Source: Lytechinus pictus (lineage: Eukaryota). From it: a stretch of DNA of 64,000 nt. Positions within the stretch are counted from its first letter, which is position 1; each line of letters opens with the position of its first letter. The stretch is taken from positions 41,664,001 through 41,728,000 of the forward strand of contig NC_087247.1 in the NCBI RefSeq assembly GCF_037042905.1, given 5' to 3'. This document shows, piece after piece, positions 1 through 54,455 of the stretch. A program made the position numbers and the translations under genes. The notes beneath the pieces were generated by a model. That model searched no databases and was not told where the DNA came from. It worked only from the letters and a program-made list of their open reading frames with translations.

Positions 1-3000
1 GCGAAATTAACATAGACGAATGTGAGAGCAATCCATGTTATAATAGCGGCACGTGCATTGATGGAATAAATGAATTTCACTGCTCTTGTGTGATAGGATT
101 TGCTGGAGTAACTTGTGAAACGAATATCAACGAATGTGCAAGCGACCCATGCTTTAATGACGGAACATGTGTAGACCAAGTTGCTGGATATATATGCGAA
201 TGCCTTGATGGATTCAGTGGACGTCACTGTAATAATGACATAGACGAATGTGAGAGTAATCCATGTTTAAACAATGCAACATGCATCGATCAAGTGGATG
301 GGTATGAGTGTCAATGTTTGCAAGGTTTTGAGGGCATGCACTGCGGGATTGACATCGACGAGTGTACCTCATCACCATGTAGAAATGGAGCTGCCTGTGT
401 AGATATGATAAATGGTTACAGATGTGAATGTCTATCTGGATATGAAGGAATTCATTGTGGGATAAATACAGATGAGTGCGAAAGCAATCCTTGTCAAAAT
501 GAGGCAACCTGTGTTGATAGAGTGAACAAATACAAGTGTACATGTCAAGAAGGTTTTCAAGGAAATCAATGTGAAATTGATATCAACGAGTGCAGTAGTG
601 ATCCTTGTAGCAATGGTGCAACTTGCCAGGACAGAATCAATGCATACTTCTGCGAGTGCAATCCTGGATTTGCAGGAATTAATTGTGAAACAGACATCAA
701 CGAATGCGAAAGCAGACCTTGTGAAAACGGTGCGACATGTGTGGACAAAGTGAATGGATATTATTGTAGTTGTGACCTTGGTTATGATGGCATTCTTTGT
801 GAAAATAATATCGATGAATGTGGAAGTAACCCGTGTTTGAATGGTGCTAGATGTCACGACGAGATAAATGGATTTATGTGCCAATGTACAGATGGTTATC
901 ATGGCGTCTTTTGTGAGACCAACATAGATGAGTGTGCAAGTCTACCGTGTAAGAATAACGGAAAATGTAAAGACAAAATAAATGGTTATATCTGTAAATG
1001 CCAAAAAGGGTTTGAAGGATTGCACTGTGAGAATGACATTGACGAGTGCTCCAGCTCCCCGTGCATGAATTCAGCAACTTGTGTAGACCTGATTGCTGGA
1101 TACGAATGTGAATGCAGCCCTGGATACATAGATATCCATTGTGAAACAGACATTGATGAATGCGTCAGTTTACCTTGTGAAAATGGAGCTACCTGTTGGG
1201 ATGATGTTAATGGATACACCTGTTTATGTATGCCCGGTTACCAAGGAGTCGATTGTGAAGAAGATATTAATGAATGTGGCAGTGAACCTTGTCAGAACAA
1301 TGCTACATGCGTGGATAAAGTTGACAGATATAAATGTATTTGCATTCCCGGTTTTCGTGGAAAAGAGTGCCAAACAAACTTCGACGAGTGTACCAGCAAT
1401 CCCTGTTTAAATGGCGGACAGTGCGAAGATGGTGTGAACGATTATCTATGCCATTGCACACCGGGATATACTGGTGACTTGTGTGAAATTAATATTGATG
1501 AATGTCAATCAATACCGTGTCAAAATGACGCTCGCTGTATCGACCAAATTAACGGATTTACATGTGATTGCAAAGATGGCTACGACGATACTCTATGCTC
1601 AACAGATATCGATGAATGTTCCAGTCAGCCTTGTTTGAACAATGGAAGTTGCACTGACATGATAAATCGATTCAAATGCATTTGTATACCAGGATTCGAT
1701 GGGGCACTTTGTGGACAAAACATAAATGAATGTAGAAGTAACCCATGTTTTAATAATGGAGAGTGTGTTGACGACATAAATATGTATTTCTGTCGATGCA
1801 CTCCTGGATTTGAAGGAATACAATGCGAACTTGAAATTGATGAATGTTCAAGCAATCCTTGTCGAAATGATGCCCGCTGCCACGACAATATTAACAGATA
1901 CAGCTGTGAATGTGTACCAGGTTATGAAGGAACCCACTGTGAAATTGACATAGATGAATGCTTGAGTGACCCGTGTGAGCATGGTGGGACTTGCAGAGAC
2001 ATGACAAACGAATACCAGTGTCTGTGCCGAGCAGGATACAATGGGGAAAACTGTGAGAATAACATTAATGAATGTTACAGTGAGCCTTGTTTTAATAACG
2101 GCACCTGCTCGGACAAAGTCAACAGATACAGATGCCTATGCCTGGACGGATTTGATGGTGTTCACTGTGAAGTTAATATCGACGAGTGCGCCAGCGATCC
2201 CTGTATGAATGCTGCTTCATGTTTTGACCAGATTGATAGTTATCAGTGTCTTTGTCAACCCGGATTTACGGGCGTTCAATGCGAAATTGAAATCAACGAA
2301 TGCAGTAGCTACCCATGTCAAAACAAAGCAGAATGCATAGATTTCATAAACAGATATGAATGCCGATGTAAACCAGGATATGAAGGAATTCACTGCGAAA
2401 TAGAAATTAATGAATGTATCAGCAGTCCGTGTTTGAATGATGCTACATGTATTGATAAAGTTAATCGCTTCAGGTGTTCCTGTCTTCCTGGATATGAAGG
2501 TGTGCTGTGTGAGACTAATACAGATGAATGTCAGAGCTCTCCTTGCCATAATGAAGCGAGATGTCAGGACCGAATTAACGGATATATATGCATATGCCCG
2601 TATGGATTTGATGGTGCCCAGTGCCAAGTTGATATTAACGAATGTGAAAGTTTCCCTTGTCACAATGGTGGAATTTGCCTGGACAGAGTCAATGGATACG
2701 AGTGCCAGTGTGCTGCTGGTTTTAGGGGAGTGGAATGTAAAATAGATATCAATGAATGTTCTAGTAGCCCTTGCCAACATAACTCTGAATGCGTAGATCG
2801 AATCAATGGATATAGTTGCTCATGTAATCAAGGAACTGAAGGTGTACATTGTGAGATTGACATCGATGAATGTGCAAGTCAGCCGTGTCAAAATGGAGCC
2901 GAGTGTAAGGATGGAATGAATGGCTATCAATGTCAATGTCAAATTGGATACCAAGGTGTTTACTGCGATGTCAACATAGACGAATGCGTGAGCTCCCCTT

Positions 3001-4978: not shown

Positions 4979-7900
4979 GTATATTATTATTATTTGTATC
5001 AACTTAAATAACCATGAAATGTTGCATCGAAATAAAAGATGACGGGGGCTTCAAAATTTACACTGCATGAACGAAAAATGTAATATTAATTACACTATTG
5101 AATATCTAATTGTTGGTCATTTTATGTAATCATACAGTATTTATACAGCAAACTGTGTAATCATTCATTGGTTAAGAAATGTCACTTTGCATGGTATTTA
5201 ACTAAATCTAGGTATCTGTATTTGAATATTTAAAGGTGTCTTTGCCCACCTCGATATTCTGGTCTGGGTTGTGACGATTATGATGAGGAAGGTTGTGGAT
5301 CGACAAAGTGCTTCAACGGCCAATGTATTATCGATGGGGTAACCGATAATGGCATCAAATACAACTGTAAATGCAACAACGGGTTCATCGGAACTGAATG
5401 TCAGACGTGTAAGTAACCCCAAGGCAGGTAATCATTAACAAGAGTCAAGGTAGGAAAACTGTATTTTAGTACCATACCTGCACTGATCAAGAATCAGCTT
5501 TCATTTAGGAAATTCAATATGTTAGTAGATTTAGCTGCGCTGTTCCCCATATCTAGCATACATAGGTTTACTTTAGGTAAAACTTTTAAAATTCATACGC
5601 AGATTATTGTCTATCTCGTCACAAAAGAGGTAATCGAATACTTTCTCAAAAAATATTCTTAAAACGTTTTGAAAATTATTAAATTATTTTTAGTTTATCT
5701 ACAATGAGAAGTAACAAAACTTAATAGTCCATCTGACGGTGTCTGAAACGCTGTTCTTTTTACTGTTGTTTCGCTTCTATAGATTTACTGAACGTCACAG
5801 CTAGCGTGCTAATTGAGGAAAAGCACTCACAACTGAGCGGTCTTGAGCACAAGATGAAGGAAGTGCTAATGGAAGCCATGGAGAAGACAGATGACATCCA
5901 TAATTGTTCCAATGTGGACATCGCCATTATAGATACTACGACGGGCAATGGAGCCTTATCGGGGTAATCACTACTCAATCGTGACAGTATTTCCGATTAT
6001 ATCAAGATTATGGAATAATTCCAGTTCGAAAACGAATTATAAGTAGCTTTGTCATGGTTATTATGCTAGTATAACTTTATGTACTCATACACACTAGACA
6101 CAACTTATTTATATGAACTTAATTGAATTTCATTAATACGTCTTTTAATTGTTTAAGTCAGTAGGCTGTTGATATGATCGAAACGTTTGTTATATAAATT
6201 CATGAAGATAGCATCCAGTTTAATATGTTATTTTCTTTGACATTTCTTACAGTATGGAATTTACGAACGTAACAATCTACGCAATGCTGGATGATAAGCC
6301 TGCCGATCGCGATTCTCTATCACATATGTTAAGAGCTCTCCCTCCAGCCAAAGTCAACAAACTCATCCATCCATATCGACTCTTTGTCGACAGGCAAATG
6401 CCACCTGAAGTACATACAGATATCACTGTAAATGATGAAAAGAAGAAGAAGAAGAAGGTATGAAATATAGACTACCTAATAAAGTAAACACTATTGCTCT
6501 TCTTTTGAATAAGCTACACCGGTTACCTTTTTGTGCAATTGAATTCAAGATCCTCGGCATTTTTAACTTTAAAGTGCCTATGAGTATTGGCTCTTACTTC
6601 CAGGTTGCAGCCGCATGACTGTACATGTATGAAGAAAATAAAATGCAGTAAATGAATTCCGTGGAAAAGAAAGTTGAAATTTTCGGTCATAGGCCTTCAT
6701 CAGGTAAAATGAAATTCATTAAAATTTAAAATAATTCTTTATAGAATTGATTTTCTTCATTTAATTACATTCCTTGAACGACTGTTTTGAATGAAATGGA
6801 GGCATATTTTTTTTCTCCTTTAATATTTTACTCATAGAAACAGAAGTATAAATTTGGATATTGTCCCGGAAATTTCAATGTTCGATTGACTACCTGCGAA
6901 TTGTTCTTCTGGGACCCTGTAGGAAACCTTTTGACGTTAGTTTAAAAAGGTTTCCTGATGATTCACAGTTGATGTTTCATGAGATTTACGCTGTCGTGCC
7001 TATCCAAATACACCCGCCCCTACTCAAATCATTACAGACTGAGTCTGAACAAAAAGTTTTCATATTAGCAGACGATGGTTTGCACTAATGGTGAGAGCGC
7101 TGTTCAATGTTACGAATTTCCTTCAAACTTATAGCAACAGAGTTAACTCATTGATTTAACAGTACATGGAAATGATATCTATAGTTTTTTTTATTCTAAA
7201 CTCACTTTTAAAACGGAGCATAGAAATCATCACCATTCCCATGATTAGAAAGTTAAAAGATTTAATGGCAATCAGCATATACAAAAAAATATTGTTCAAA
7301 TTTTGTTACAATTCAAATAATATTTGTGCACTTTACATTGTGTACGTTTCCCAATAATTTTCATAATTGGAGTAATCAACAATCCATTAAACCTGTAAAG
7401 TAGAGGTTTAGAGTTTTGATAAGCACGTGTTCTCTTGCTTTCCCCCAAATGCAACGATTATAAGTCAGATGTCGCCAGTCAATAAGCAAAGGCGGTTATT
7501 TGGAGCTAATTTAAAAAAAAAATGTTTCCTTTCAAACCTCTTCATACCCAAACCTAACCTGCTCAATTATCATGAAATGGAAAGACTATCCCATCATGTC
7601 CATTTTTCTTTCATTTGGAGTCAACACACAAATTTCAAACAAACATCATCCTGAAAATTTCATCAACATCGGATGAAAAATGAAAAAACTATTTGACATT
7701 TTAAAACTGCGTTTGATTCCACAAATAGCTATACGTAAAACCTAGTTGGTATGGAAAATATGATACTGTATCTTATTTTTACTTTTTCTACCTTGAACAT
7801 GTGATTCATTAGAGAGCATTTTTCTTGTAATTTAAATGGCTATTTTCCCATTTAATAAAAAAGAAATACACAGGAAATCAGGAGTGTATGAGTTACCTCT

Positions 7901-9085
7901 TTTCCTAGTTGCATATCACCCACGTCATGCGGGAAAAACGTAAAATAAAAAAAAAAATCTGAAAAGTCATAACGCTCTTATTTTACATCAAATTGTCGTG
8001 ATGTCTTTTTTAATATAATGTTCTCTCTATTTATTCAAATTTTGTTGATGGGGTAGACCTCATTTTGAACAGTTTTTGTCTTAACAGGATATCCTTGTAC
8101 GATAATTAACATTTCTGATAGCTAAAGTGATGTAAAGGGTGTAAATTAAAGTCATTGTGGGTAAACTGACATCTTACAGATAAGAAATCGTTAAAGAAAC
8201 AATAGTTTCATAGTTTCTTAATCCTTAGCTCTTAAAAAGTGAGTCTATTCAAAGGTCAGCTATACCCCTTATCTTTCATTTGAACTCATTTCCTTTACCT
8301 TAATCGTGATGAGTAAAATACTAATTACTAACAATAAAAAATGAAGTCCGCATTCTGTCCTTTAAAGAACCAGCCATTGAGCCGTTGGAAATGGGAGTTT
8401 GGGAGGGGGGTCTGTCGGAATATAAATTCTTGCCTGTTTATGAAGTTTTAATCTCTATTAAACAGTAACAATATTTATTTAAATATATAGTTTCCAGAGA
8501 ATACTAGATCATTCAAAAGGGCTGGATCTTTAGGTAGTAAATTAACATATTGATATATTGATTTTTGTCTATATAGTCCTGGGGACATCGGCATTGGTAC
8601 GTTTTCTTAATTGCCATCGTCATCCTCATTGGAATTGCATCAGCAGCGGTGTACATCGTTAGGAGGTAATTTTCCTTCCTTTAGCACCTGTAGATATGCA
8701 TTATCTTAAAGCATGGCCCTGCTAAATTTGTTGATATCCCAGTAATAGACTTTTGAAGGATAACGCAGAGATAGCATTATCTGACACATATTCATTACGA
8801 TAAGTTTTTTTTCTATAGCAACAACACAAAAATATAATGAATTATATGGCCTATCAAATCTTAATCTTGTAGTATTTCATGATTTTTCGGATTTTTATGT
8901 TTGGATAACTCAATAAATCTGTTTCTCAAATTTGAACTAACAGTTTGAATCGGGAAATAATCATCATCGGTCAATGATTCCCATATAGGCAATGCCGGGT
9001 CACTATTTTCCTCGCCTCATTTTCATATTTTATTGATATCCTTACTGTATCCAGGCAGCGGAAAGCTGAAATTCCACCCGACTAA
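1..9085 (+). CDS. Gene A (5'-truncated): giant calcium-binding EGF-repeat type-I membrane protein (Notch/fibropellin-like repeats), paralog of gene B; exons <1-4978, 5236-5408, 5783-5963, 6253-6457, 8577-8665, 9055-9085
   Basis: All introns GT-AG with compatible phases (2,1,2,0,2). From position 3 the joined exons give 5655 nt in one frame ending in TAA 9083-9085. Content: at least 45 EGF repeats, a ~125-aa alpha/beta juxtamembrane module, TM helix and tail RRQRKAEIPPD. Confidence 0.88.
5236..5408 (+). CDS. Gene A exon: end of EGF44 plus last non-calcium-binding EGF
   Basis: aaag|G TGT CTT TGC... gives CLCPPRYSGLGCDDYDEEGCGSTKCFNGQCIIDGVTDNGIKYNCKCNNGFIGTECQT; donor T|gtaagt. Confidence 0.9.
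5783..5963 (+). CDS. Gene A exon: first half of SEA/ferredoxin-like juxtamembrane module
   Basis: Acceptor ttctatag|, donor GG|gtaatc. YLLNVTASVLIEEKHSQLSGLEHKMKEVLMEAM... aligns with gene B exon 51093-51258 ([12 protein letters not shown]). Confidence 0.82.
6253..6457 (+). CDS. Gene A exon: second half of juxtamembrane module ending in poly-Lys
   Basis: Acceptor ttcttacag|, ORF MEFTNVTIYAM...DSLSHML...HPYRLF...DEKKKKKK, donor AAG|gtatga. Homologous to gene B MAFTTVAF...DSLKLAL...SPYKIF. Confidence 0.85.
6676..6703 (-). ncRNA. Penelope-type minimal hammerhead-like core (helix I missing; probably a relic)
   Basis: Minus strand reads CTGATGA-A-GGCC-TAT-GACC-GAAA-ATTTC. Confidence 0.35.
8577..8665 (+). 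CDS. Gene A transmembrane exon
   Basis: atatag|TCC TGG... gives SWGHRHWYVFLIAIVILIGIASAAVYIVR; donor AG|gtaatt. Same 89-nt length and phases as the gene B TM exon. Confidence 0.88.
9055..9085 (+). CDS. Gene A terminal coding exon (very short cytoplasmic tail)
   Basis: Pyrimidine-rich acceptor ...tgtatccag|G CAG CGG AAA GCT GAA ATT CCA CCC GAC TAA, phase-compatible; AATAAA signals follow near 9396 and 9573. Confidence 0.7.
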
Positions 9086-25028: not shown

Positions 25029-25070
25029 ATGGCGAAAATATGGATGTTATCACTTCTGGTCATCTTCATG
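25029..25070 (+). CDS. Gene B exon 1: start codon and signal peptide
   Basis: caaaATGG context, [14 protein letters not shown], phase-0 donor ATG|gtaaat. Joined to the next exon it gives [22 protein letters not shown], a typical signal peptide. The link across a 16-kb intron is inferred. Confidence 0.65.
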
Positions 25071-43000: not shown

Positions 43001-46000
43001 CAAACACTTCAATGTTATCTCAATTTAAATCTAGTATATGAATAGTGTATAATATGAGACAGGCTATGACAGGGGGTCCAAATATATGTTCATTATAGAT
43101 TAAAGATAAGATGTCTGGTTTCTGCAAAAACTTTACGGCCCCTAATATAAGGCAGTTTCCACGGCTTCCTGGTTAGTTACCAGACTATTAAACTGTCATT
43201 CCTAAAATAGCACCCTTCATCTCCTTGCTTTCAAACTAGCTGTAGATAGATGGAATGGACAACACCCAGTTGTTCATTTACATTCAGGTTATGATATATA
43301 CATGTGTATTATATTAGAAGCTTTCTAGTAATCATGAGCAAAAACATATTCATATGTATATTAGAAATTGGGTCGGAAAATGCTTGCTTCTGTAGCGGAA
43401 ATTTAGGTCCGAATATATTGAATTTCGAATAAAATATTTGGAATTTGAACAATTTAATATATACAAACCGTTTTACATAACATGTTATGTTAAAATTAAA
43501 AATTAACAATTGAAAGAAAAAACGTTTTTAAGAATGTTAGTTGTAAACAAATAAAAAATATACTGCAAACGTAAGGTGGAACGTCTTCAAAGCTATGATA
43601 TATTTTAATTTTCCTGTAATCTCCTTAACATGACCAAATAATTTTTTTTTTCAAATAATAAGGTCTGTATATTCTATAAAATTTATAATAGTGCTTATAG
43701 ATACTAACGACAAAATATAATGTCTATTTTCAGTGACATCGACATGGCGAATTGTCCTTACGGACGCTTACGAACAGGGGCTGTCTTTGACAACCAGGAC
43801 GACTTCCCATTTCCTGAAATCCTCTCTGGAAACATTCCCAATCCGATGTTGATTAAGGTCCGGGAATGGGAGGTAAGCCAATAATGTGATGATAGGTGAT
43901 TCTATTATGACTGTAATCTTAACATTTCAGTAAGAATTTAGTATTTACAAATTTAACTAGGCTGTCTGCCTAGAAACGGCGTATTATATAATGTGGGCAT
44001 GCCTCCGACGAAGATTCTGCTAGGATCGAAAGCTTATGCCCCTTATGACTTTCTAATTTACTCCATTGGCTCTCTTTTATTAGATAAGCATTTTTCAGCA
44101 GCTTCTTTTTGCCACAAATTTAACTTAGTAGAATAGACTTAGATCCAAAGGCAGCGGTGAATGGGGTTGGTGTATCCCACAGATTTAGTGTGGTATCCAA
44201 GATGATGAAGAAGTCTTAGAGATAATTTTGGATAACACTAATCGAATAAAGATAATGAAACATGTTTTGCTATAATTTGTGAACCAAATCGAAACAATTG
44301 AAAATCATCACCAGTATTATTTACCTCTGAGCTGATGGAGGGAGGTACACATGCCCACCTATTACATGGATTTCAATAATTTTGTTGCTGTCTGCCTAGA
44401 AACGGCGTATTATAAAATTTGGGCATCCAAGTGACAAATCAAATGTAGATGTATATTATTTGAACAAAATTAGTAACTTTCAGGATCTAGATTCATGTTT
44501 CAGATAATGTTTAGTTAGTGCTTAAAAAATCCAAAGAGCTAACTGGTAAGGTAGCTTAATCAAATCCGATAGAAAATCCATGCATGGTCAGGGTTGACAA
44601 GGAGCTCAGTTAGAATTTGAAAGTCACATTGTTTATATTAATACAAAAAAAGACGTCACGACATGGACAACAAGCAGCCTGTAAACTCTTCGACACTCTC
44701 TTCAGGTGTCACTTCAAAAGCAATCGGCATACAATCTGACATATACCTTTCAACGCATTACGCATAATGCCGATTTTATCTTCCATGTGTGAAGAACCTT
44801 AATTGGCAAGCATTCAAATTTGTCAGGTAGTGAAATATATGACGATAAGTATATACCACGGTTCTATTCCATTCGTTTGAAATATCTCTCAAAATTACAT
44901 AAGTTTGAAAAATAAAACATCCTTTTTGATCCTCTTAATGATTTCACTGGAATAACGGTTGTCATACCATAACTTACCATGAAGTATGACCTTATTTAAA
45001 TTAGATGAGACGACACTGTTAGGATTCACGTTTTCTCAACGGCTTGTGAACTGATTTCGAAATTGATGGTGATTTTTCGTTGATTTGAAGAAGAAAAAAA
45101 ACGTTTGTTTTATTTCATTCAAACTTATGTCATGGCATTCATATAGATATAAAGATTTTTATCTCTGTTGTCATCTGGCTTATCTCGTCTCACATGATCC
45201 TCATGGGGAGGGGTGATCTGTTTAGCTTGTAACTAGGGTAAACTGCTATTAATGATTGAAAGGATATAAAGTTTTATATCATGAAAAGGACATTAATATA
45301 TCACATAACGATGATTGATCCTATAAATGATATTCAACGATAAATATTGTACTATCAGATAAACATCATATTTCGAAATCTTTAGGGTATTGTGAGATTC
45401 TGGGGGAAAAAAAGGACAGTGTTAGGAAGTTTTTCCTCGACCAGACTCCTAGGCATTTTCCTTAACGACGGAACATAATCATTGAGACAAGGCGGATGGA
45501 TTGGGGTACTTCATCACAAAGTCAAACGGATAGACATCACGTACCGCTTGTTTTTTTAAAACCGATATGATAGTGGCCATGAGATAACCATCTTTGTAAT
45601 TCTTCAATACATTGGCTTTCTTCTTTTTCCTTTACAGAGAGGTATCAGGGTAAAGGTCGGTGTTTGGGATATCGATCTAGGGCATGAGCCAAACAGTGTC
45701 GATTTCTACACGAGGAATTTCGCCATCCGACCCGACATCAACTTGATCGAAGCGCCAATCTTTAGATACACGCTTACTGGTGATGGATACACAGAGTAAG
45801 AAATTATCCTAATTCCTATAAGGCTTCTATGTATAAAGCTGATTGCTCGGACTTGAATAAAACATATAAATAGACATAAAATCATACCTTTCGATGTTGA
45901 TTCTTCATATGACGCTGAAAGAGAAATGTGCAACTGAGAAGATTCAGCTGGTCTCGTTTTAAAGCAAGCTTAGAATAAGTGCATGGTATGCATGGCACAA

Positions 46001-49000
46001 GCAAGAATTATTTTTGGTTGTCGTATGTAAATGAAGTAATAATAACAACCAAAACGAGTCTAAAACTTACTTACCTATTTTACCCATATCATATAAGAAG
46101 ACTAAAATCATGCAATTAAGACAGTTAATTTAGTGATAGGTCCGCAGGAAATAAAAACTTCAGATCACCAATTGTGTTGAAAACTTCGTCACAAAGTCTA
46201 CTGCCTAATAATGTTCTCATCATTAACATATGAATATGTATCTTCTCTTCAATATTTATGTCTTTACCTTTTCTCACGAATATCTTCAATTTTTCCAGAA
46301 CGAAAGTGGAGATTAGAGTATATTGTTCTGAGCATTTCTATGGTGGCAGTTGCGATGTATATTGCAATCCTGGAGAAACGGGTCATTACAGTTGTAATAT
46401 CCTTTCTGGCGTGAAGGAGTGCTTCCCTGGTTGGGTTGGACCAGAATGCGATGTGGTGAGTCTTCATAATCATGATAATGAGGGTTCTATCAATAGAATA
46501 CTATCCTTGGAAAAATATTAACTCTACAAATTATCATTTGTAACCGTGTATGATCTGTAATGGCAAGAGAGTCAATGCTAGAGTATAGAAGAGTCTACGA
46601 TATCATTGATCGGATTCGGTTTTAGCTATACTTGCCGCCATCTACCCAGAAGATATTTGGATAACCAATAAAATACGAAAGCCTTGTATTATGGGAAAGC
46701 GATTTGCTATCCCTTGCTGGAAAGGTCCCGATACCAGGGTGTGGAGAAAGTTCATTCATTGTGAGCGGGCTAGCAAGCATTAGAAGGAGAAATATATTTT
46801 GCTAATAATATTTAAAAGACTAATGATCTAAATTCTCGATGTATTTGGTCGGTGTAATGATGAGTGCATAAACATATTTTCCGACTCCGACAACAATCAA
46901 AGGCATTTTCGATCGTTTATAATCATTAATCGACTGAGCATAACAATGGTATTATAGAATTGAAGACCACAAATTGCGCGATGGCGCATACACTGTTAGA
47001 AAATTTATCCTTAAAATAAAAGAAGTTCCTGCAGCAGAGTCTCGAGAACACCTGTAATCTTACCAGATTGCGTAATCTTACAGGAAATTGGTATTTGGTG
47101 TGTGGAACCTTACAAATTTCCTTAAATAAAACACAATTTTCCCCCTTTAAAACAGACCTGTTCTGTTAAATTGCAGAAAAATTCCTGTTTTATGAATTTA
47201 CAGAACGATTCTGTTATTGCTTTCTACAAAATCAGGTTTTTTTAACAGTGTACGTAGGAGCGATTATCTGGTAGCCTGAAGGAGTTGCGAGTTTAGTTTG
47301 GTCAAATGACAGGGTTATTAACCTAAAACAACATGACTTAAATTTCCCGTCTTCTGACGATAAACTGTCTAGTCCTGCTTTGTGTCTTCAATTTTGGTGA
47401 AAAAGTGAATTACTTTCAATGTATGCTATTGATAAAAATTCTTTGTTGTTCCTTTATTTTCGATTTTCTGGACAGAATGTAAATGAATGTGCATCTCGAC
47501 CGTGTATGAACGGTGGTACTTGTGTCGACTTGGAAAACGGATATGAATGTACATGTGTGGACGGAGCAATAGGTAAGGGTTCTACGATTCTAGAAAATAA
47601 GTTTATATCGTCCATCCATCTCTTTTCTTATTCTTTATATTGAGCGTAAGTAGTCAATAGAGGATAAATTTTGAAGGGGGATTTGCCCTCCAAGAAAGTC
47701 AATCACACAGCAAGTGTCATATAATAGGGATTCTTAAATGACCAAAAGGTTGCATTCTTGGAACCGGGGACCATTCGAGTAATTTAAGACATTTACCGGA
47801 TGCCATCCATGGCACTTTGACCTAAAGCTCAGCCGAGGTTAATTCATGTCAGTATTGTCAGCCGAAAGAAAACGTCTCATCCGACATGTCTGGTAAAAGT
47901 AATTTAACTACCCGAAAGGTAAATGTTTTCAGTAAGTCAATGTCGATATCAATTTATGTATTTTCAGGAACCCACTGCGAGCACAATCCTGACGACTGCA
48001 GAGGAGTCGAATGTCTACACGGCGGACAGTGCATTGATGGCTATGCGTCCTTCACCTGCCGATGCCAACCTGGTTACACCGGGATCATGTGCCAGTTGAA
48101 CATTGACGAGTGTGCATCATCGCCATGCAGAAATGGTGCGCTATGTCAAGATCAAGGAAATGCCTATTCATGCTATTGTCTGGCGGGATTCTATGGTGAA
48201 AACTGTCAACACGAATTTGATGAATGTAAAATACTCAAACCCTGCAGGAATGGAGGAACATGCTATGACAGAGTAGCATCCTTTCACTGCGAATGTATGA
48301 CAGGATTCGGTGGTCCTGACTGCTCCGTTAACCTTGATGAATGTGCAAGCAGCCCGTGTGCGAATGGCGCTCAGTGTATCGATTCGGTTGCTGGTTTTAT
48401 CTGTCTTTGCAACGAAGGGTTCCGAGGACTTCTTTGCGAGGAAGACGTCAATGAATGTGCGAGCAACCCTTGCGAAAACGGAGCGAGGTGTGTTGACTTG
48501 GTAGACTCATACGAATGCCAGTGCCTTCCAGGATATCTCGGAGAGAATTGTCAGTTGGAATCAGATGAGTGTGCTAGCAGTCCTTGCTTAAACGGAGGCA
48601 GGTGCTTGAATCGAATAAACGAATTTCGATGTAGATGTCCAGCGGGTTACAGTGGAAGCAGGTGTGAGGTCAACGTCGATGAGTGTGAAAGTTTACCATG
48701 TTTTAATAACGCCACCTGCACAGACCAAGTTGATGGTTTCCAGTGCCAGTGTACACTAGGGTTCACAGGAACAACTTGCAGGATAAATACTGATGAATGT
48801 CTCAGCTCTCCTTGTCAGAATGGAGGTCAGTGTATTGATGGTGTAAATGGATATTTATGTGAATGCAGACCAGGTTACTACGGAAAGAACTGTAGAAGAG
48901 ACATCAATGAATGCGCGAGTGATCCTTGTAAGAACGGAGCGATTTGCCGTAATTTAGTTGACGGCTACGAGTGTGAGTGCATGGTTGGGTATGAAGGGAA

Positions 49001-52000
49001 ACACTGCACAACCAACATCAACGAATGCGCCAGCAATCCCTGTCTTAACAGAGGTTCATGTATAGATCAGATCAACGGATATTTCTGTAGATGTAGGCCA
49101 GGGTGGGGTGGGCGGCATTGCGAGATCAATGCCAATGAATGTTCAACGGAACCATGCATGAATGGAGGACGGTGCATCGACGCTGTCAATGGATTTTTCT
49201 GCCGTTGTCGACCAGGATTCCGTGGTCGCCGTTGTGAGATCGACAACAACGAATGCGCAAGCAACCCATGTTTGAATGGAATGTGTTTAGATGGGATTAA
49301 TCGATTTATTTGTCACTGCATACAGGGCTTCACTGGAAAGAATTGTGAAATTAATATCAATGAATGTGCATCTCGCCCATGCAAAAATAATGGAGTCTGT
49401 CGAGATGGTGTGAGTGGTTACACTTGCGTTTGCCCAGCAGGCTACGGAGGCAAGGACTGCCACATTAACATCAACGAATGCTCTACTGGTCAGTGTCAGA
49501 ATGGAGCTACGTGCGAGGATGGAATCCATGGATTTACCTGTCACTGTGCACCTGGATTTGAAGGTATTCTCTGTGAAACGAACATTGATGAATGCGCAAG
49601 CAGACCTTGCATCAATAATGCAAGATGCATTGATGGGGTCGACAGTTACAGATGCGAATGTTTGATCGGGTATGAAGGATACAACTGTGAGGTCAACATC
49701 AATGAATGTGCTTCAAATCCTTGTCGTGGATTGTCCACCTGTGTCGATATGATAAATGCGTTCCGGTGTGACTGTATTGACGGATACTTCGGCAGCTACT
49801 GTGAGACTGAAGTCAATGAATGTCTAAGTAACCCTTGCTTGAACGATGGACAATGTGTCAATCGTTTAAATGGTTACAGATGTAGTTGTCAACCAGGATA
49901 TGAAGGCCCTCATTGCGAATTTAATATCAATGAATGTAGCCGTCAAACCTGTCAAAACAACGGCAGATGCATAGATGGCGTTGGCAAGTTCTTTTGCTAC
50001 TGTCGTTCTGGATTCCGCGGGAAACACTGTGAGGAAAATATCAATGAATGTGTGAACCACAAGTGTAAAAATGGCGCAGGTTGCAGAGATGCGTTGAATG
50101 GTTATTCTTGCATGTGTACCGAAGGTTATACGGGGATTTTCTGCGAAGAAGACATCAACGAGTGCAATTTAATGATCGAGCCTTGTCCACCTGAAACTTC
50201 ATATTGTAAAAATCTTATCGGGACCTATGAATGCTCGAACATAGCTCCAACCACAATTCCACCACCAACAACTACCGAAGACCCATGTGGGTCAATGCCG
50301 TGTGAGAATGGGGCCACCTGCATAGTCACGTCAGAAGGAAAAAGGTACACCCCCATCTCTTTATGGGTAGATATTAAACATAAACATTTATAATAGAAAA
50401 AACAATTATTTTAATTGGTACACTAAATTTTAAACCGTTTTGGGGGACAGATTTGTAAGCCCAAAGGAATTAAAACGTGATTCAGGCATTTACAATTGTA
50501 TGTAATTACAATTGTTAGAGAGATGAAATACACGACAAAGACAGAAACATATCTGACGGAAAAATAAAATTGTTTTTTTTTTCTTTTGATATATTACCCT
50601 GATATAATGTGTTCTACCATTCCATCACCCCTCACTTCCTTTACATGAAACGTAGTCTTTATGAGCAATATGTTTCCCTCTCTTTTTATTTCTGAAATAG
50701 ATGTATTTGTCCCGGTGATTTCGTGGGAGAAAATTGTGAAATTTCGTTTGGTAAGTACATAATATTTATGTCAGCCAAAATTTGCAGTCACTGTGATATA
50801 TCCATCAAGAGATGTCAAAATGGCATCTTTAGCATGACCTTTTCTCAAAGAGGTAAATTTCAATCGATACGTTAACATTCCTGCTAAACTGGTTGCCTCC
50901 GATTCGACCCCATGATATTTTACTCATTCAAAATTCGTGCAAAAATATAACAAACTGACAAAAACACTTGTATCGCCCATTGGACACGCATGATAATGTT
51001 TTGCAGGGCAATGTCTAGCAGGTGTGTTATAAAAAGAGCAAAATTTTAAGGTTCATTTCACTTGTCTTTATATTGCACATTACGACTTGCAGCTAACACA
51101 ATTACTGAGGTGACACTTGAAAATCACATCGACCCATCACTACCTGGTCTGGAGAAACGATTGGCAGAACTGATCCACACTGCTACAGGGAAAGAACCTC
51201 ATATCATGGTGGAAATCGATATCGTCAATGCCATCAACGGGTCATCATCAATCACAGGGTATGAAATAAACTATTTCTCGTAGTCAAAATATCGATAAAC
51301 CCATGATTCGAAGCATCAAAATATAACATCCTTACCAAACTGTCGGCCGCACAGAACGTCAAAGTCAAAACATTTATTTCAATGTGTAAGTAATGCATTA
51401 TTGTAACATTAGGCATCGCTGCCACATTACAGGTTGCAACAGGGCCTCAGCGCATTGCTATGCGTCAGTACAGATTGTTAAGAGACTAAACAAATGATGA
51501 CGGTACAGCTAAATTTACAGGGTTCTCGCTAAAGAAGCAATTGATGAAAATACTAGTGAGTGTTACCTCATTGGCATACGCGCACAAAGTTTTGTGGTTG
51601 CGGATCTGTGACCCGGAGTTACAACTATTGTAACTTTACCATTTTTTTGCAACTACCATTTAACATTGATTTTGATTGGCTGTTGACTCGTGTTACCATG
51701 GTAACTGTCATAATGAAAACGTTACAATAATTGAAACTCGTTGTAAAATTGGGCTCTGGACTTCACCGAGTTTACCCCCAATAGACAAATAATTCGTTCT
51801 CTCTCGCTTGTATAGGGAGTGATATAGACACGGAATGTCTGTCTAAACAGAAGCTCAATAGTCTAGTAACATAATGTATTCAATACTTAATTAGGATGAT
51901 ATGGCATTTATCTGTTATTTTTCTAGAGTGGGGCAAGAATAAATTTAGATTTAAAATGGGTGAGGCTGATAATCTGCATGCAATGCACTAAGGAGAGCAC

Positions 52001-54455
52001 TTGTAAACAGCGCACTCGTTTTCGAATGTCCACCTATACTACCGTTCGAAAGCTGCCTACAGTCTTTCAGGAGCAACTCAATGACATCCCTCCATTCTCT
52101 AAACAATGATAATAATGACAGAAACCATCGAGCGACTGTTAATTATTCGAACTTACTCTACCTGGTGCCAGAGTAGAACGTCAAGATGTTTGGTGTTTAA
52201 TGCCTTCAAAAGTTCAGAACTTTGATGGCTTCAGAACTATAATGGCACACTTATAACCAACCTTGACGATCAGGGGTGTACATATGTGACCCTGTGGGAT
52301 TCACATGGTTCAAATGGGGGATGACGCAATAGATCACCCCTACACCTTCGGAATTTAAACCAGTGTTGACGACTTAAACTCTGATTCAAGTTGCACCACT
52401 GCATCATCAGTTCATCACTATTACTCTAAAATGTGTTTAACCCGCCATCAAAATGTCTAATGAGGAACTTCATTCGAAGAGTATTACAGACATAGAGGGA
52501 ATATTTAGAACTCATCCACCACTTGATTGATATAATTACAGATAGTATTTCATTGTATTCATAAAGGATTCCTGGCCGAAGTATTTAATATACTGTTTTA
52601 CTATTTGAATTTTCTTGTACATTACAGAATGGCGTTTACAACCGTTGCATTCAACATGAGCGTCTTCAATTCAACCTTCAATGAAGACTCTTTAAAACTT
52701 GCCTTATTAACCCTCTCAAGAGAGGAACAAGATCTCATCATGAGCCCTTATAAAATATTTAATGAAACACCAGTAGTGGTTGAATTCAAGAATCCAGACA
52801 GGGTAAGTCAATGTAATAATAAGTACATAATTCAATCTTAACATTTTTCAGATTATATACATTACATAGCATTTTTGCTCTTAGAAGTTGAAAAGACTCA
52901 TTTGAACAACCAATAAATATTCTCCATTTATGATTTTTAAATAAAAAAAAAACCAACGCAAAACATGAGAAATACCTTACGATACTTCCAAGTAAATTTT
53001 GTGAGGTTTTTAGCTTGGATACTAGTACAACGTAACACAAATTCGTCACATTTGATATTTACTCCTGATCAAACCTGGGTCAAGAATATGGTTCCATTGT
53101 CATAATCGGCATTTTGATCCACGTTAACCATACGAAAAAGCATATACATGTAACTAAGCAGAGGTATCTCCATGTACATTTTCTTTTCAGACGTGGTCAG
53201 AACGGAACTGGTTTGTCATATTTCTTCTCTTTGTCTTACTAATATCAGCTGCAGTATTCGGCATCTGGTACTTGGATAAGTAAGAAATAGATTCTCTAAA
53301 AAAGTTTCTATCTACTTGTGTGTCTAATTGTTGTACTTGCACAGTACAGGAATAATAATTAACAGCTTGTCCAACCCTACCCCCTCTCTCTTTTTCTTCC
53401 TAAGCTCTGTCTATCCCTCTCTCAGCAATGAAGTTGAGGGATTGGCGAAGCATAGCGAGTGGAAAAGCATTTTCAAATTGTTATTTCAGTTTGGAAAATA
53501 TGATTTAAACAGATTAAAACTTAAAAAGCAAACACTGAAAATTTAATGAAATAAATGAAATTTGGTATTTTAAAGTTATGCACTATTTCTGTGAAACAAT
53601 TCAATGCATATCATCATGAATGTTCATTGATCGTGCTGACGATGCCCCCCCCCCCCCCCACACACACAAACTTTAAAGAAATTAATTGCATGAAATGGAA
53701 AGCAATCAACATCCTGCCCCATGCACATAAAACATTATCAATAATTAGGCCTATCGTACAGTTAGGCAATAGTTTTTGTAACTTATTTAGATACAAGGGA
53801 GAAACTAGTCAAACTAGAAACTGGTAAACCATAAATGACCAATGTAATATTTTTGTTTATACGGTCACATATGATGCAAAATCTTGAAAGGAACTTTTCC
53901 ATCCAAGTTCGATCAACTTTATAGTGTGTAGAGTTTTACATTTTGATTTATTTATTGGTATAAGTTCAGTCAGGATTTGATTTTAATTGACAGTAACTAC
54001 CAAACCCCCACACACCGATATTCAAACAGCTATTAAACTACGATCATGGGACTCTGCTCAAGCTTTAAAAAAGTAGGGTGTTCGTAATGTGTTTGCATTT
54101 TGATTGTGTGCCTTTAATACGAGTCTAAAACTACAGTACACCTTGAGGTAGACGTTGGATTCAAGGTAGTAAAAGAGTCATATCACAGGCTCACGGAATT
54201 TGCTGTCTGTACTTATACTCGGTTTGTTGTTTCTGTTGCTAAGGAGAAATGTTATGGGAATCTAATTTTTGTTCATATTGTAATTTAATGATGTTGCTTC
54301 AAAAGTGAATAGTACTTCTTAACCTCACGGTGTTCCGATTTCTCCCTCTGTTCCCTCTCTCCAGGCGATATCCGGCATGTGAAGGAGAAAGCAGAATGGG
54401 AAAATGGAAACGACTTTTAAACATCCCACAAGAGAAGGCTGCAGAAAAGAAATGA
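25029..54455 (+). CDS. Gene B: Delta/Serrate-like (MNNL/C2-DSL-multi-EGF) type-I membrane protein, non-canonical Notch-ligand-like, 1234 aa; exons 25029-25070, 41399-41562, 43734-43872, 45638-45795, 46299-46455, 47476-47572, 47968-50344, 50701-50750, 51093-51258, 52628-52802, 53191-53279, 54365-54455
   Basis: Twelve GT-AG-bounded exons join into one 3705-nt frame. Recognisable signal peptide, MNNL (CC..C..C..F.LC, CPYG, NP, W), six-Cys DSL, 21 full EGFs plus one truncated, TM helix and TGA at 54453-54455. Confidence 0.85.
27910..33272. mobile_element. Foldback non-autonomous DNA transposon, Academ-like
   Basis: TAT|TAGTCCGGGTTATAATTGAGC ... GCTCAATTATAACCCGGACTA|TAT. The outer ~700 bp of the arms are almost identical inverted copies; the inner arms are ~190-bp tandem units that switch orientation near 31110. 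TAG...CTA ends with a 3-bp TSD fit Academ. Confidence 0.85.
29413..30493. mobile_element. Non-autonomous hAT element nested in the foldback
   Basis: CAGGGTTGTT ... AACAACCCTG ends, subterminal GATTTAAATC palindromes and a perfect 8-bp TSD TTGCTCTA (29405-29412, 30494-30501). Confidence 0.9.
33747..33835. repeat. Small degenerate palindromic MITE relic
   Basis: TGCAGTCACA..GCGGCCGTAC ... GTACGGCCGC..TGTGCCTGCA inverted arms. Confidence 0.45.
34649..35603. mobile_element. Tc1/mariner-type MITE
   Basis: TA|CAGTGCGTA.AAAAAAAA.TTACACTT.GAAAA ... TTTTCAAAGTGTAAACTTTTTTTTGATACGCACTG|TA; inverted TTGAGTGAGCAC internal motifs. Confidence 0.85.
35725..35950. mobile_element. Short CAC-ended MITE at a TA site
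   Basis: TA|CACTCTTAAAAAGGTTGGGCAAAA ... TTTTGCCCAACATTTTAATGTG|TA. Confidence 0.6.
37727..37830 (+). promoter_or_regulatory. Candidate internal promoter (CCAAT plus TATA box) in gene B intron 1
   Basis: CCAAT at 37727 and TATAAATA at 37823-37830, followed ~170 bp later by donor CTG|gtacgt at 38001/38002. Motif-only evidence. Confidence 0.25.
39758..40026 (-). mobile_element. tRNA-derived SINE with (TTA)n tail
   Basis: Minus strand GGTGGCTCAGTGG (A box) ... GGTTCGATCCC (B box), then a body and an (ATT)n microsatellite at 39758-39803. Confidence 0.8.
41399..41562 (+). CDS. Gene B exon 2: N-terminal part of MNNL/C2 domain
   Basis: [54 protein letters not shown] resembles the Delta/Jagged N-terminus (L..F.N..G.L..G.CC...C...C...F.VC); donor AA|gtaagt. 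Confidence 0.85.
41737..42713 (+). mobile_element. Helentron/DINE-like non-autonomous element with five ~157-bp tandem repeats
   Basis: Starts ACAAG, with subterminal inverted repeat TGTCTCGCCCAC/GTGGGCCAGACA. Units start at 41864, 42017, 42174, 42311 and 42468, followed by a (GACG)n microsatellite, a 3' hairpin and an A-run. Confidence 0.8.
43734..43872 (+). CDS. Gene B exon 3: MNNL/C2 domain
   Basis: ttttcag|T GAC... gives [46 protein letters not shown] (C.YG...T, NP, W motifs); donor GAG|gtaagc. Confidence 0.88.
43961..44426 (+). repeat. 40-bp direct repeat (43961-44000, 44387-44426) flanking an insert that starts with a Penelope-type hammerhead-like motif
   Basis: GCTGTCTGCCTAGAAACGGCGTATTATA.AAT.TGGGCAT occurs twice with 2 mismatches. 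Confidence 0.8.
43995..44041 (+). ncRNA. Variant minimal type-I hammerhead-like motif
   Basis: CCGACGA-A, helix II GATTCT-gct-AGGATC, GAAA, palindromic AAGCTT, flanking GGGCAT/ATGCCC pairing; the core has C at the U4 position. Confidence 0.35.
45638..45795 (+). CDS. Gene B exon 4: C2 domain C-terminal strands
   Basis: Strong acceptor tttttcctttacag|; [33 protein letters not shown]...; donor GA|gtaaga. Confidence 0.85.
46299..46455 (+). CDS. Gene B exon 5: DSL domain
   Basis: [45 protein letters not shown] keeps the DSL six-Cys spacing plus the YG, GHY.C and GW.G..C motifs; acceptor ttttccag|, donor GTG|gtgagt. Confidence 0.92.
46991..47250. mobile_element. CACTG-ended MITE at a TA site
   Basis: TA|CACTGTTAGAAAA ... 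TTTTTTAACAGTG|TA. Confidence 0.8.
47476..47572 (+). CDS. Gene B exon 6: first EGF
   Basis: gacag|AAT GTA AAT GAA TGT... gives [32 protein letters not shown]; donor G|gtaagg. Confidence 0.92.
47968..50344 (+). CDS. Gene B exon 7: 2.4-kb EGF-array exon (19 full EGFs, truncated EGF, Pro/Thr linker, start of last EGF)
   Basis: Core of ORF 47886..50393; acceptor tattttcag|GA ACC CAC TGC, donor AG|gtacac. Confidence 0.95.
50701..50750 (+). CDS. Gene B exon 8: end of last EGF
   Basis: aaatag|A TGT ATT TGT... gives [16 protein letters not shown]; donor G|gtaagt. Confidence 0.88.
51093..51258 (+). CDS. Gene B exon 9: first half of SEA/ferredoxin-like module
   Basis: ttgcag|CT AAC... gives [56 protein letters not shown]; donor GG|gtatga. 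Confidence 0.82.
52628..52802 (+). CDS. Gene B exon 10: second half of juxtamembrane module
   Basis: attacag|A ATG GCG... gives [58 protein letters not shown]; donor AGG|gtaagt. Confidence 0.85.
53191..53279 (+). CDS. Gene B exon 11: transmembrane helix
   Basis: ttcttttcag|ACG TGG... gives [29 protein letters not shown]; donor AA|gtaaga. Confidence 0.9.
54365..54455 (+). CDS. Gene B terminal coding exon: short cytoplasmic tail
   Basis: Long pyrimidine tract ...ccctctctccag|G CGA TAT... gives [30 protein letters not shown] then TGA. Confidence 0.75.

What the first reader, a model, noticed from the sequence alone, without database searches (positions are those of the whole stretch)
1..54455. 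Tandem pair of paralogs with very different stalk lengths (at least 45 versus 21 EGFs)
Seen: both genes share a giant EGF exon ending in phase 2 inside an EGF. Both have a two-exon juxtamembrane module (phases 1-2-0) with matching motifs (L.GLE.., GM.FT.V, DSL, PY..F). Both also have an 89-nt TM exon beginning (S/T)W..R.W(Y/F)V and a short tail. Gene A exceeds the 36 EGFs of Notch even though truncated. Inference: a locally duplicated family varying in reach from the membrane, predicting a C2-DSL head for gene A and possibly more paralogs upstream.
Basis: partly seen in the sequence, partly recalled or inferred. Interest (0 to 1): 0.8.

Follow-up and report, generated by a model that had tools for sequence, protein, structure and literature searches.

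The report
Tandem DSL proteins with 21–74 EGFs
The window holds two of three neighbouring genes for Notch-ligand-like membrane proteins that share one head, one membrane-proximal SEA-like domain and tiny tails but carry 21, 33 or 74 EGF repeats. The family is conserved in echinoderms and hemichordates, and I found no paper describing it.

Summary

- **Gene A.** It continues 6.5 kb upstream of the window. It has a Pfam-significant MNNL/C2 head and DSL domain, and 74 regular EGF units, 72 of them in one 8.2-kb exon. RNA contigs splice its last six exons exactly as predicted and show an 11-residue cytoplasmic tail.
- **Gene B.** It has the same plan with 21 EGFs plus one 4-Cys half unit.
- **Gene C.** A third paralog with 33 EGFs lies about 40 kb upstream.
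- **Juxtamembrane module.** It has no Pfam match. It is homologous between A and B (BLASTP E 5e-16). It is also homologous to a module found only in starfish, crinoid and hemichordate proteins of the plan MNNL-DSL-EGF-module-TM (hhalign E 1e-6). A confident AlphaFold model of the starfish module (pLDDT 86) has the SEA-like beta-alpha-beta-beta-alpha-beta fold. Its best structural matches are PCDH15 MAD12, CDH23 MAD28, IA-2, MUC16 SEA and the Notch2 HD domain.
- **DSL Notch-contact loop.** It is partly kept in A and deleted in B and C. No DOS EGFs follow the DSL domain.

These are non-canonical DSL-family surface proteins on stalks of very different length. What they do remains inference. I rate this a new variant of a known kind, of moderate to high interest.

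The parts
1..4978 (+). Gene A, giant EGF exon (window part). The exon starts 3200 bases upstream of the window and is 8178 nt long in all. It ends in phase 2 inside EGF 73.
   Evidence: Continuous frame without stops. Pfam EGF matches in 67 stretches. RNA contigs cover its 3' end and join 4978 to 5236.
5236..5408 (+). Gene A exon: the rest of EGF 73 plus EGF 74. Ends in phase 1.
   Evidence: GT..AG joints 4978|5236 and 5408|5783 in RNA contigs.
5783..5963 (+). Gene A juxtamembrane exon 1 (beta1-alpha1-beta2 of the SEA-like module). Ends in phase 2 at the beta2-beta3 turn.
6253..6457 (+). Gene A juxtamembrane exon 2 (beta3-alpha2-beta4, then a Lys-rich linker). Ends in phase 0.
8577..8665 (+). 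Gene A 89-nt transmembrane exon, starting SW..R.WYV.
   Evidence: The HMM built from starfish, crinoid and hemichordate modules hits it at E 4.5e-4.
9055..10484 (+). Gene A last exon: 10 codons of tail (cytoplasmic part RRQRKAEIPPD), stop codon at 9083-9085, then 3' UTR.
   Evidence: Joint 8665|9055 (GT..AG), and the RNA contig runs on to 10484. Sequence.
25029..25070 (+). Gene B, putative exon 1 (signal peptide [20 protein letters not shown] donor, phase 0). Predicted only.
   Evidence: Scan for ATG, hydrophobic core and in-phase donor. No RNA evidence.
41399..41562 (+). Gene B MNNL/C2 exon.
   Evidence: Pfam MNNL 1.9e-6, 27.9 bits, above the cut-off. Gene model.
43734..43872 (+). Gene B C2 exon 2.
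   Evidence: Aligns to gene A and to starfish heads.
45638..45795 (+). Gene B C2 exon 3.
46299..46455 (+). Gene B DSL exon. The contact loop is shortened by 2 residues and the RDD motif is lost.
   Evidence: Pfam DSL 5.9e-11. DSL alignment.
47476..47572 (+). Gene B EGF 1 exon (calcium-binding type, no DOS motif).
47968..50344 (+). Gene B giant EGF exon. Ends in phase 2 inside the last EGF.
   Evidence: Held at 0.89-0.91 of sampled words by runs X1 and X3, which one search shows to contain spliced RNA.
50701..50750 (+). Gene B exon completing the last EGF.
51093..51258 (+). Gene B juxtamembrane exon 1.
52628..52802 (+). Gene B juxtamembrane exon 2.
53191..53279 (+). Gene B 89-nt transmembrane exon, starting TW..R.WFV.
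54365..54455 (+). Gene B tail exon with the stop codon. The cytoplasmic part is about 31 residues.

Best explanation
The window carries genes A and B of a three-gene tandem cluster (C-A-B, all on the + strand). The cluster belongs to a divergent branch of the DSL (Delta/Serrate/LAG-2) family that I could trace only in echinoderms and a hemichordate.

Each gene encodes a type I membrane protein built in this order:
- a signal peptide;
- a C2 (MNNL) plus DSL head;
- an unbroken array of Notch-type calcium-binding EGFs (C 33, A 74, B 21 plus a half unit), almost all in one giant exon;
- a roughly 120-residue SEA-like (membrane-adjacent, ferredoxin-fold) domain split over two exons;
- an 89-nt TM exon;
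- almost no cytoplasmic tail (A 11, B about 31, C 3 residues).

Shown: the architecture, the paralogy, transcription and splicing of gene A's 3' half, and the fold class of the module (modelled on a starfish homolog).

Inferred:
- The calcium-stiffened, heavily O-glycosylated rods hold the same kind of head at very different distances from the membrane. At about 2.5-3.5 nm per EGF this would be roughly 60, 100 and 200 nm.
- The tails are too short for Mindbomb/Neuralized-driven endocytosis, and the DSL contact loop is eroded in B and C. The proteins therefore more likely act as adhesive, spacing or Notch-modulating surface molecules (or bind another partner) than as classical signal-sending ligands.
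- The SEA-like domain may serve as a mechanical or shedding element next to the membrane.
For: - Gene models have no internal stops and use canonical splice sites.
- RNA contigs reproduce gene A's last five introns.
- Pfam finds MNNL and DSL above cut-off in A and B.
- A has 74, C has 33 and B has 21 regular six-Cys units. In A, 70 fit the O-glucose consensus, 42 the O-fucose consensus and 72 the Asx-hydroxylation consensus.
- Juxtamembrane plus TM of A against B: BLASTP E 5e-16.
- The heads are closest to starfish proteins, at 30-36% identity and E 1e-28 to 1e-35, against 25-29% identity to Jagged.
- Starfish, crinoid and hemichordate proteins share the plan MNNL-DSL-EGF-module-TM and the W..(N/H)W(Y/F)(V/I) start of the TM segment.
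- Profile-profile match of the ectodomain module: probability 90.8%, E 1.2e-6 over 94 columns.
- AlphaFold model: pLDDT 86.4, pTM 0.78, beta-alpha-beta-beta-alpha-beta.
- VIA-align Z-scores: PCDH15 MAD12 7.8, CDH23 MAD28 7.0, CELSR1 6.8, IA-2 6.8, GPR126 SEA 6.1, MUC16 SEA 5.5, Notch2 HD 5.0. Foldseek finds KIAA1549 and PCDH15 juxtamembrane regions.
- DSL loop alignment.
Against: - No binding, localisation or functional data exist.
- The fold was modelled on the starfish homolog, not on the window's own module. The tool refuses spliced sequences.
- Z-scores of 5-8 are middling for a common ferredoxin-like fold. The top single hit is a nucleoporin.
- An HMM of the starfish-type module detects only the TM exons of A and B, not the two ectodomain exons taken singly.
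- Gene A's 5' half, exon 1 of every gene, and all of gene C lack RNA support.
- Two rRNA-depleted RNA runs show no reads on gene A.
- Gene A keeps part of the Notch-contact loop (PR.D..H), so Notch binding is not excluded.
Confidence: 0.7

Rival explanations
1. They are bona fide signal-sending Notch ligands. The different stalk lengths set the distance over which Notch on another cell can be engaged.
For: - All three have a complete C2-DSL head.
- The heads match every solved Delta, DLL and Jagged N-terminal structure about equally.
- Starfish relatives keep a near-canonical PRDD.(Y)GHY loop and tails of about 100 residues.
- Gene A keeps P-R-x-D and His in the loop.
Against: - Cytoplasmic tails of 3, 11 and about 31 residues leave little or no room for the ubiquitin-ligase docking and endocytosis that ligand pulling needs. 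This rests on established knowledge of Delta and Jagged.
- B and C have 2- and 4-residue deletions in the contact loop, and the Phe207 equivalent is lost in A, B and C.
- No DOS-type EGF1-2 is present.
Confidence: 0.15
2. They are membrane-anchored structural or adhesive matrix proteins, working like fibropellins or Dumpy. The DSL head would be an evolutionary relic with no role in Notch biology.
For: - The EGF rods are very long and the tails minimal.
- In the same genome another DSL-EGF giant (gene D, about 66 EGFs) is followed by ZP-like exons and a TM segment.
- The DSL loop is eroded in B and C.
- EGF-stalk families of graded length occur elsewhere in this genome (note s1-313791, not checked).
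Against: - The head is retained with all its cysteines in every paralog and across starfish, crinoid and the three genes here. This argues for a function of the head itself.
- No matrix-assembly domain (ZP, avidin-like, VWC) is present in A, B or C.
Confidence: 0.12
3. The 74-EGF array is an artefact: an assembly expansion of a repeat, two fused genes, or a decaying pseudogene.
For: Long arrays of similar repeats are prone to misassembly. The 5' part of gene A has no transcript evidence here.
Against: - The units are old and distinct: mean pairwise identity 52%, maximum 75%, with no periodicity at any lag.
- There are 2726 codons without a stop, and all 74 units keep the C4-x-C5 spacing.
- RNA-like run X3 holds 0.76 of the sampled words of window 1-4978, and its 3603-nt contig runs about 1.9 kb into the exon.
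- Runs of a second organism label also hold parts of it.
Confidence: 0.03

Closest known systems
Canonical DSL ligands (Delta/DLL1/DLL4, Serrate/Jagged)
   Same: Type I membrane proteins with an N-terminal C2 (MNNL) domain, a DSL domain, then EGF repeats and one TM segment. The heads match all solved ligand heads (DLL1 1.7e-8, Drosophila Delta 8e-8, JAG1/JAG2 about 2e-6 for gene A's DSL exon).
   Different: - 21-74 EGFs, against 6-9 in Delta and about 16 in Jagged.
- All the EGFs are of the calcium-binding Notch type.
- No DOS EGF1-2 and no VWC/cysteine-rich region.
- An extra SEA-like juxtamembrane domain.
- Tails of 3-31 residues instead of about 100-150.
- The contact loop is eroded in B and C.
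- The heads are equidistant from Delta and Jagged.
Unnamed starfish, crinoid and hemichordate proteins annotated automatically as 'fibropellin-1-like', 'protein jagged-1-like' or 'Delta-like protein' (Asterias rubens P0179, Acanthaster P0159, Patiria P0241/P0252, Anneissia P0253, Saccoglossus P0243)
   Same: - The same order of domains, including the juxtamembrane module and the W..NW(Y/F)V start of the TM segment.
- The same intron positions in the head.
- They also occur as neighbouring paralogs: Asterias has a tail-to-tail pair of 984 and 988 residues.
   Different: - The relatives have only about 12-16 EGFs, spread over several exons.
- Their DSL loop is near-canonical.
- Their cytoplasmic tails are about 100 residues.
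- The window's genes have one giant EGF exon, a 3.5-fold range of stalk length, and almost no tail.
SEA and SEA-like membrane-adjacent domains (MUC1/MUC16 SEA, IA-2 ectodomain, PCDH15 MAD12, CDH23 MAD28, Notch HD)
   Same: The beta-alpha-beta-beta-alpha-beta fold sits directly before the TM helix of a long rod-like ectodomain.
   Different: - No Pfam SEA match.
- No G/SVVV autoproteolysis motif: A and B have G-M at the beta2-beta3 turn.
- An intron sits exactly at that turn.
Giant rotifer 'Delta-like' proteins (Adineta and Rotaria, 4100-4470 residues)
   Same: A C2-DSL head followed by a very long EGF array. The heads align at 22-29% identity.
   Different: No match to the juxtamembrane module. 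Probably an independent expansion.

Membership tests
DSL (Delta/Serrate/LAG-2) ligand family | N-terminal MNNL/C2 domain | tested here: met
   Pfam PF07657: gene B 27.9 bits and gene A 26.1 bits, cut-off 22.5.
DSL (Delta/Serrate/LAG-2) ligand family | DSL domain with six Cys and the (Y/F)(Y/F)G motif | tested here: met
   Pfam PF01414: gene B 42.9 bits and gene A 45.9 bits, cut-off 24.2. Alignment.
DSL (Delta/Serrate/LAG-2) ligand family | Conserved Notch-contact loop F-C-R-P-R-D-D-x-F-G-H in the DSL domain (residues recalled from the Jagged1 literature) | tested here: not met
   Gene B has CNPGE--TGH and gene C has CVDGP----T, both with deletions. Gene A has CKPRGDGIDH, partly kept, with Ile at the Phe207 position.
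DSL (Delta/Serrate/LAG-2) ligand family | DOS-type EGF1-2 (present in Jagged and DLL1, absent in some ligands) | tested here: not met
   EGF1 is an ordinary calcium-binding EGF preceded by E/N-I/V-D/N-E. Checked by inspection of the units listed.
DSL (Delta/Serrate/LAG-2) ligand family | Intracellular domain long enough for Mindbomb/Neuralized docking and ubiquitination | tested here: not met
   Tails are 11 residues in A (supported by RNA), about 31 in B and 3 in C.
DSL (Delta/Serrate/LAG-2) ligand family | Binding to and activation of Notch | not testable with these tools
   Needs binding and reporter assays.
SEA domain (Pfam PF01390) and SEA-like fold | Sequence match to the SEA profile | tested here: not met
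   No Pfam family at E up to 1 for the modules of A and B, other than chance TM-like hits.
SEA domain (Pfam PF01390) and SEA-like fold | Beta-alpha-beta-beta-alpha-beta fold next to the membrane | tested here: met
   Tested on the Asterias homolog, which is linked to A, B and C by hhalign E 1.2e-6. Model pLDDT 86.4. Z 5-7.8 to MAD12, MAD28, IA-2, GPR126 SEA, MUC16 SEA and Notch2 HD.
SEA domain (Pfam PF01390) and SEA-like fold | G/S(V/I)VV autoproteolysis site at the beta2-beta3 turn | tested here: not met
   A has ..LSG/MEF, B has ..ITG/MAF and the starfish have no G-S. Gene C has G-S-P, which is unclear.
Ambulacrarian DSL-EGF-module-TM family (unnamed) | Head, juxtamembrane module and TM-start motif homologous to the starfish, crinoid and hemichordate members | tested here: met
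   Intron positions in the head are shared.
Fibropellins (the name automatic annotation gives to the relatives) | Secreted EGF protein with a C-terminal avidin-like domain | tested here: not met
   The C-terminal exons encode the SEA-like module and a TM segment. No avidin-like Pfam hit.

The most novel reading that the evidence does not exclude
A length-coded set of Notch-ligand-like proteins. The same C2-DSL head would be displayed about 60, 100 or 200 nm from the membrane, so that different paralogs reach partners across different thicknesses of extracellular matrix. A SEA-like domain on the ligand side would mirror the SEA-like HD domain of the Notch negative regulatory region, acting as a force-bearing or force-released element. 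This would be ligand-side mechanics in a pathway thought to place its mechanosensor only in the receptor.
Probability: 0.1. Interest if true: 0.85.

Novelty: new variant of a known kind. Interest (0 to 1): 0.6.

Why it matters
Reviews of the pathway treat Delta and Serrate/Jagged as the Notch ligands of bilaterians. This genome has at least 12 DSL exons. Most belong to a family that joins the ligand head to very long calcium-binding EGF rods and to a SEA-like domain of the same fold class as Notch's own HD domain.

If these proteins touch Notch, they are a natural experiment on how ligand length, the lack of an endocytic tail and a ligand-side juxtamembrane domain affect a force-gated pathway. 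If they do not, they show how the ligand head was re-used for adhesion or matrix anchoring.

The family is hidden in databases under misleading automatic names such as 'fibropellin-1-like' and 'jagged-1-like'.

Tried and rejected
- **Homolog searches with giant exons.** Word-indexed searches with the giant exons of A and B returned only generic EGF proteins of at most 54% identity. They returned no self hit and no clear ortholog. The useful starfish relatives were found only by re-screening those hits with the heads.
- **Search for other giant DSL proteins.** A third search, restricted to the DSL part of gene D's 2565-residue frame, found nothing.
- **Structure of the window's own module.** They were not sent again, and the starfish homolog was modelled instead.
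- **Exon fragments as alignment rows.** Aligning single exon translations as separate rows gave a useless alignment.
- **Starfish-type HMM.** An HMM of the starfish-type module finds only the TM exons in the window. Only the profile-profile comparison links the ectodomain parts.
- **Exhaustive profile search.** The search over 1.84 billion proteins gave just 11 representatives, none from a sea urchin.
- **Foldseek against PDB.** It gave no hit below E 1e-3. VIA-align and AlphaFold DB gave the SEA-like/MAD matches instead.
- **Raw RNA runs.** X37 and X38 showed no reads on gene A.
- **Literature.** Walton et al. 2006 (PMC1880897) is not held. No paper holds DSL, SEA domain and Notch ligand together. 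Gazave et al. 2009 (PMC2770060) state that Delta EGF numbers range from 0 to 75 but do not name the species in the text.
- **Exon 1.** Exon 1 of genes A and C could not be identified.
- **Organism.** Its name is coded. 'Echinoderm' is inferred from the closest relatives only.
Full report
**Where the window lies.** The window is G000:C3:41664001-41728000 of an 812-Mb genome. Organism names are coded. The closest relatives of the specific domains are starfish, crinoid and hemichordate proteins, so the genome is most likely an echinoderm. That is an inference.

**Checking the observation.**
- Gene A's open frame runs from the first base of the window to 4978. It is followed by exons 5236-5408, 5783-5963, 6253-6457 and 8577-8665 (89 nt), with phases 2, 1, 2, 0.
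- Gene B has the matching set: 47968-50344, 50701-50750, 51093-51258, 52628-52802, 53191-53279 (89 nt) and 54365-54455, ending in a stop.
- The TM-start motif occurs only twice in the six-frame translation of the window, at these two exons.
- The juxtamembrane-plus-TM regions of A and B are 29% identical, BLASTP E 5e-16.
- Logan contigs of runs X1 and X3 were laid on window 4700-10699. They join 4978|5236, 5408|5783, 5963|6253, 6457|8577 and 8665|9055, all with GT..AG ends, and in X3 on one 3603-nt contig.
- This proves that these runs contain spliced RNA and that my exon borders are right. It also shows that gene A ends with a 10-codon tail exon (stop at 9083-9085) and a 3' UTR running to about 10484.
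- The same two runs hold 0.89-0.91 of the sampled words of gene B's giant exon and 0.38-0.76 of gene A's.

**Extending the genes.**
- I fetched 120 kb upstream and 40 kb downstream.
- Gene A's giant exon starts 3200 bases before the window and is 8178 nt long. Upstream of it lie an EGF1 exon, a DSL exon (Pfam 7e-12), two C2 exons and an MNNL exon (Pfam 7e-6). These sit at the same positions and in the same phases as gene B's exons 41399-41562, 43734-43872, 45638-45795, 46299-46455 and 47476-47572 (Pfam MNNL 1.9e-6, DSL 5.9e-11).
- The gene A model is 3178 residues without a stop. Exon 1 is not found, and the 10 tail codons come on top. Gene B is 1220 residues.
- A third complete paralog, gene C, lies at window -62269..-40608. 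It is 1615 residues with no internal stop. Its TM exon has lost the donor site and stops two codons later.
- No further member lies within -120 kb to +104 kb.

**The stalks.**
- Grouping the cysteines between the DSL domain and the module into sixes gives 74 regular units in A, 33 in C, and 21 in B. B also has one 4-Cys half unit followed by a Thr/Pro linker.
- In A, 55 units have the strict D/N-x-D/N-E/Q calcium-binding signature, and most of the rest have E-x-D/N-E.
- In A, 70 units fit the O-glucose consensus, 42 the O-fucose consensus and 72 the Asx-hydroxylation consensus. These are Notch-type EGFs.
- The 74 units are on average 52% identical and at most 75%. Similarity does not depend on distance along the array. 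The array is therefore old, and is neither a recent amplification nor an assembly artefact.
- EGF1 (on its own exon) and the non-calcium-binding EGF2 (N-P/H-D/N-D before the first Cys) are shared by all three genes, as are the last units. Where units were gained or lost was not mapped.

**The juxtamembrane module.**
- Pfam finds nothing.
- I re-screened the hits of the homolog searches with the heads. This found starfish proteins (Asterias rubens P0179, Acanthaster P0159, Asterias amurensis P0176) at 30-36% identity, E 1e-28 to 1e-35. That is clearly better than Jagged at 25-29%.
- These proteins have the same overall plan, with about 12-16 EGFs. Between the last EGF and the TM segment sits a roughly 120-residue region, and the TM segment starts (S/T)W...(N/H)W(Y/F)(V/I) as in A and B.
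- A profile of that region was searched against 1.84 billion representative proteins. It found only 11 at E up to 1e-3. Those that carry a name are from Patiria, Acanthaster, the crinoid Anneissia and the hemichordate Saccoglossus.
- A profile of the ectodomain part of A, B and C matches a profile of those proteins with probability 90.8% and E 1.2e-6 over 94 columns, with the TM segment excluded.
- An AlphaFold model of the Asterias module built on a 10-sequence alignment is confident: pLDDT 86.4, pTM 0.78. Its topology is beta1-alpha1-beta2-beta3-alpha2-beta4.
- Apart from a nucleoporin ferredoxin-like domain, the top matches of an all-against-PDB structural scan are extracellular membrane-adjacent domains. 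They are PCDH15 MAD12 (Z 7.8), CDH23 MAD28 (7.0), CELSR1 (6.8), IA-2 (6.8), GPR126 SEA (6.1), MUC16 SEA (5.5), TMPRSS6 (5.3) and Notch2 HD (5.0).
- Foldseek against Swiss-Prot models finds KIAA1549, PCDH15, cadherins, PTPRN2, MUC1 and ACE2/collectrin juxtamembrane regions. A language-model look-up gives the same classes.
- I therefore call the module SEA-like. It lacks the G/SVVV self-cleavage motif. In A, B and C the intron between its two exons sits exactly at the beta2-beta3 turn where SEA domains cleave.

**The head.**
- In the DSL alignment the canonical loop C(R)PRDD.(F/Y)GHY is near-intact in the starfish and crinoid members.
- In gene A it reads CKPRGDGIDHFY. In B it is shortened by two residues, and in C by four.
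- The later GW.G motif is GY.G in A and C but kept (GWVG) in B.
- No DOS-type EGFs follow the DSL domain.
- The heads match the solved heads of DLL1, fly Delta, DLL4, JAG1, JAG2 and Serrate about equally. The family is neither a Delta nor a Jagged.

**The family in this genome and elsewhere.**
- The genome has at least 12 DSL exons. Nine lie on contig C3: five at 33.28-33.55 Mb, genes A and B, one at 46.07 Mb and one at 47.03 Mb. Two 66-bit hits on C7 are probably the canonical Delta and Serrate. Gene C's DSL exon is not among the 12.
- Gene E at 33.28 Mb has the same exon plan with about 20 EGFs, and recognisable juxtamembrane exon 2 and TM exons.
- Gene D at 47.03 Mb fuses the DSL domain to a 2565-residue frame (about 66 EGFs) and continues into ZP-like exons.
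- In Asterias rubens two family members of 984 and 988 residues lie tail to tail. Their EGFs are spread over several exons, and the head introns sit at the same places as here.
- Local duplication is therefore shared across these groups. The giant exon, the 3.5-fold spread of stalk length and the loss of the tail were seen only in this genome among the few compared.
- Rotifers have 4100-4470-residue 'Delta-like' proteins with a similar head but no such module.
- Gazave et al. 2009 (PMC2770060) mention 'Delta' proteins with up to 75 EGFs without further study. I found no paper describing a DSL protein with a SEA-like domain.

**How it may work (inference).**
- Runs of calcium-binding EGFs form stiff rods. 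At about 2.5-3.5 nm per unit (my own knowledge of fibrillin and Notch fragments), B, C and A would extend roughly 60, 100 and 200 nm.
- The C2 domain of Notch ligands binds lipid as well as Notch (PMC5538765, abstract only, listed).
- With tails of 3-31 residues the proteins cannot be expected to recruit Mindbomb or Neuralized. Classical pulling activation is therefore unlikely.
- Adhesion, spacing, cis- or trans-modulation of Notch, or another partner are more likely.
- The SEA-like domain may bear or release force, as in mucins, tip-link cadherins and the Notch NRR.
- None of this is tested.

**Verdict.** This is a new variant of a known kind, and its function is open.

Noticed in passing
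window 9660-9975: A 316-bp element with 71-nt terminal inverted repeats (92% complementary) sits in gene A's 3' UTR. The transcript contigs of runs X1 and X3 skip it exactly (9659|9976, non-GT/AG ends), and it has enormous depth in all RNA runs. It looks like a polymorphic MITE-type insertion of an abundant repeat.
   Followed up: partly
window 41863-42637, 31109-32099, 11724-12083: Three tandem arrays: units of 157 bp (5 copies, gene B intron 2), 214 bp (4.7 copies, gene B intron 1) and 103-119 bp (between genes A and B).
   Followed up: no
G000:C3:47026625-47034319 and flanks (outside the window; L021-L024, L028): Gene D on the minus strand: an MNNL exon, then the DSL domain fused to about 66 EGFs in one 2565-residue frame, followed by exons that look like a ZP domain with an RRRR site and a TM segment. 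It is a DSL-EGF-ZP protein, reminiscent of Dumpy.
   Followed up: partly
G000:C3:33.28-33.55 Mb (outside the window; L025-L027): A second cluster of five DSL exons. The first gene (E) has the same exon plan as A, B and C, with about 20 EGFs and matching juxtamembrane and TM exons.
   Followed up: partly
L008:9297-9392 (window -40703..-40608): Gene C's TM exon has no donor site after 89 nt and reads into a stop two codons later, leaving a 3-residue tail. Its module has G-S at the beta2-beta3 turn, where A and B have G-M.
   Followed up: no
L029 (Asterias rubens LR699094.1:8311717-8346591): Two family members of 984 and 988 residues lie tail to tail 3 kb apart. Their EGF array is split over several exons, unlike the single giant exon here.
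   Followed up: partly
window 58645-59205: An assembly gap (246 N) is directly followed by a (GTA)n microsatellite of about 109 copies. The long 'ORFs' listed there are artefacts of it.
   Followed up: no
proteins P0002, P0010-P0012, P0014, P0019-P0023, P0027: Bdelloid rotifers (Adineta, Rotaria) encode 'Delta-like' proteins of 4100-4470 residues with a C2-DSL head and a very long EGF array. This looks like an independent case of giant DSL proteins.
   Followed up: no
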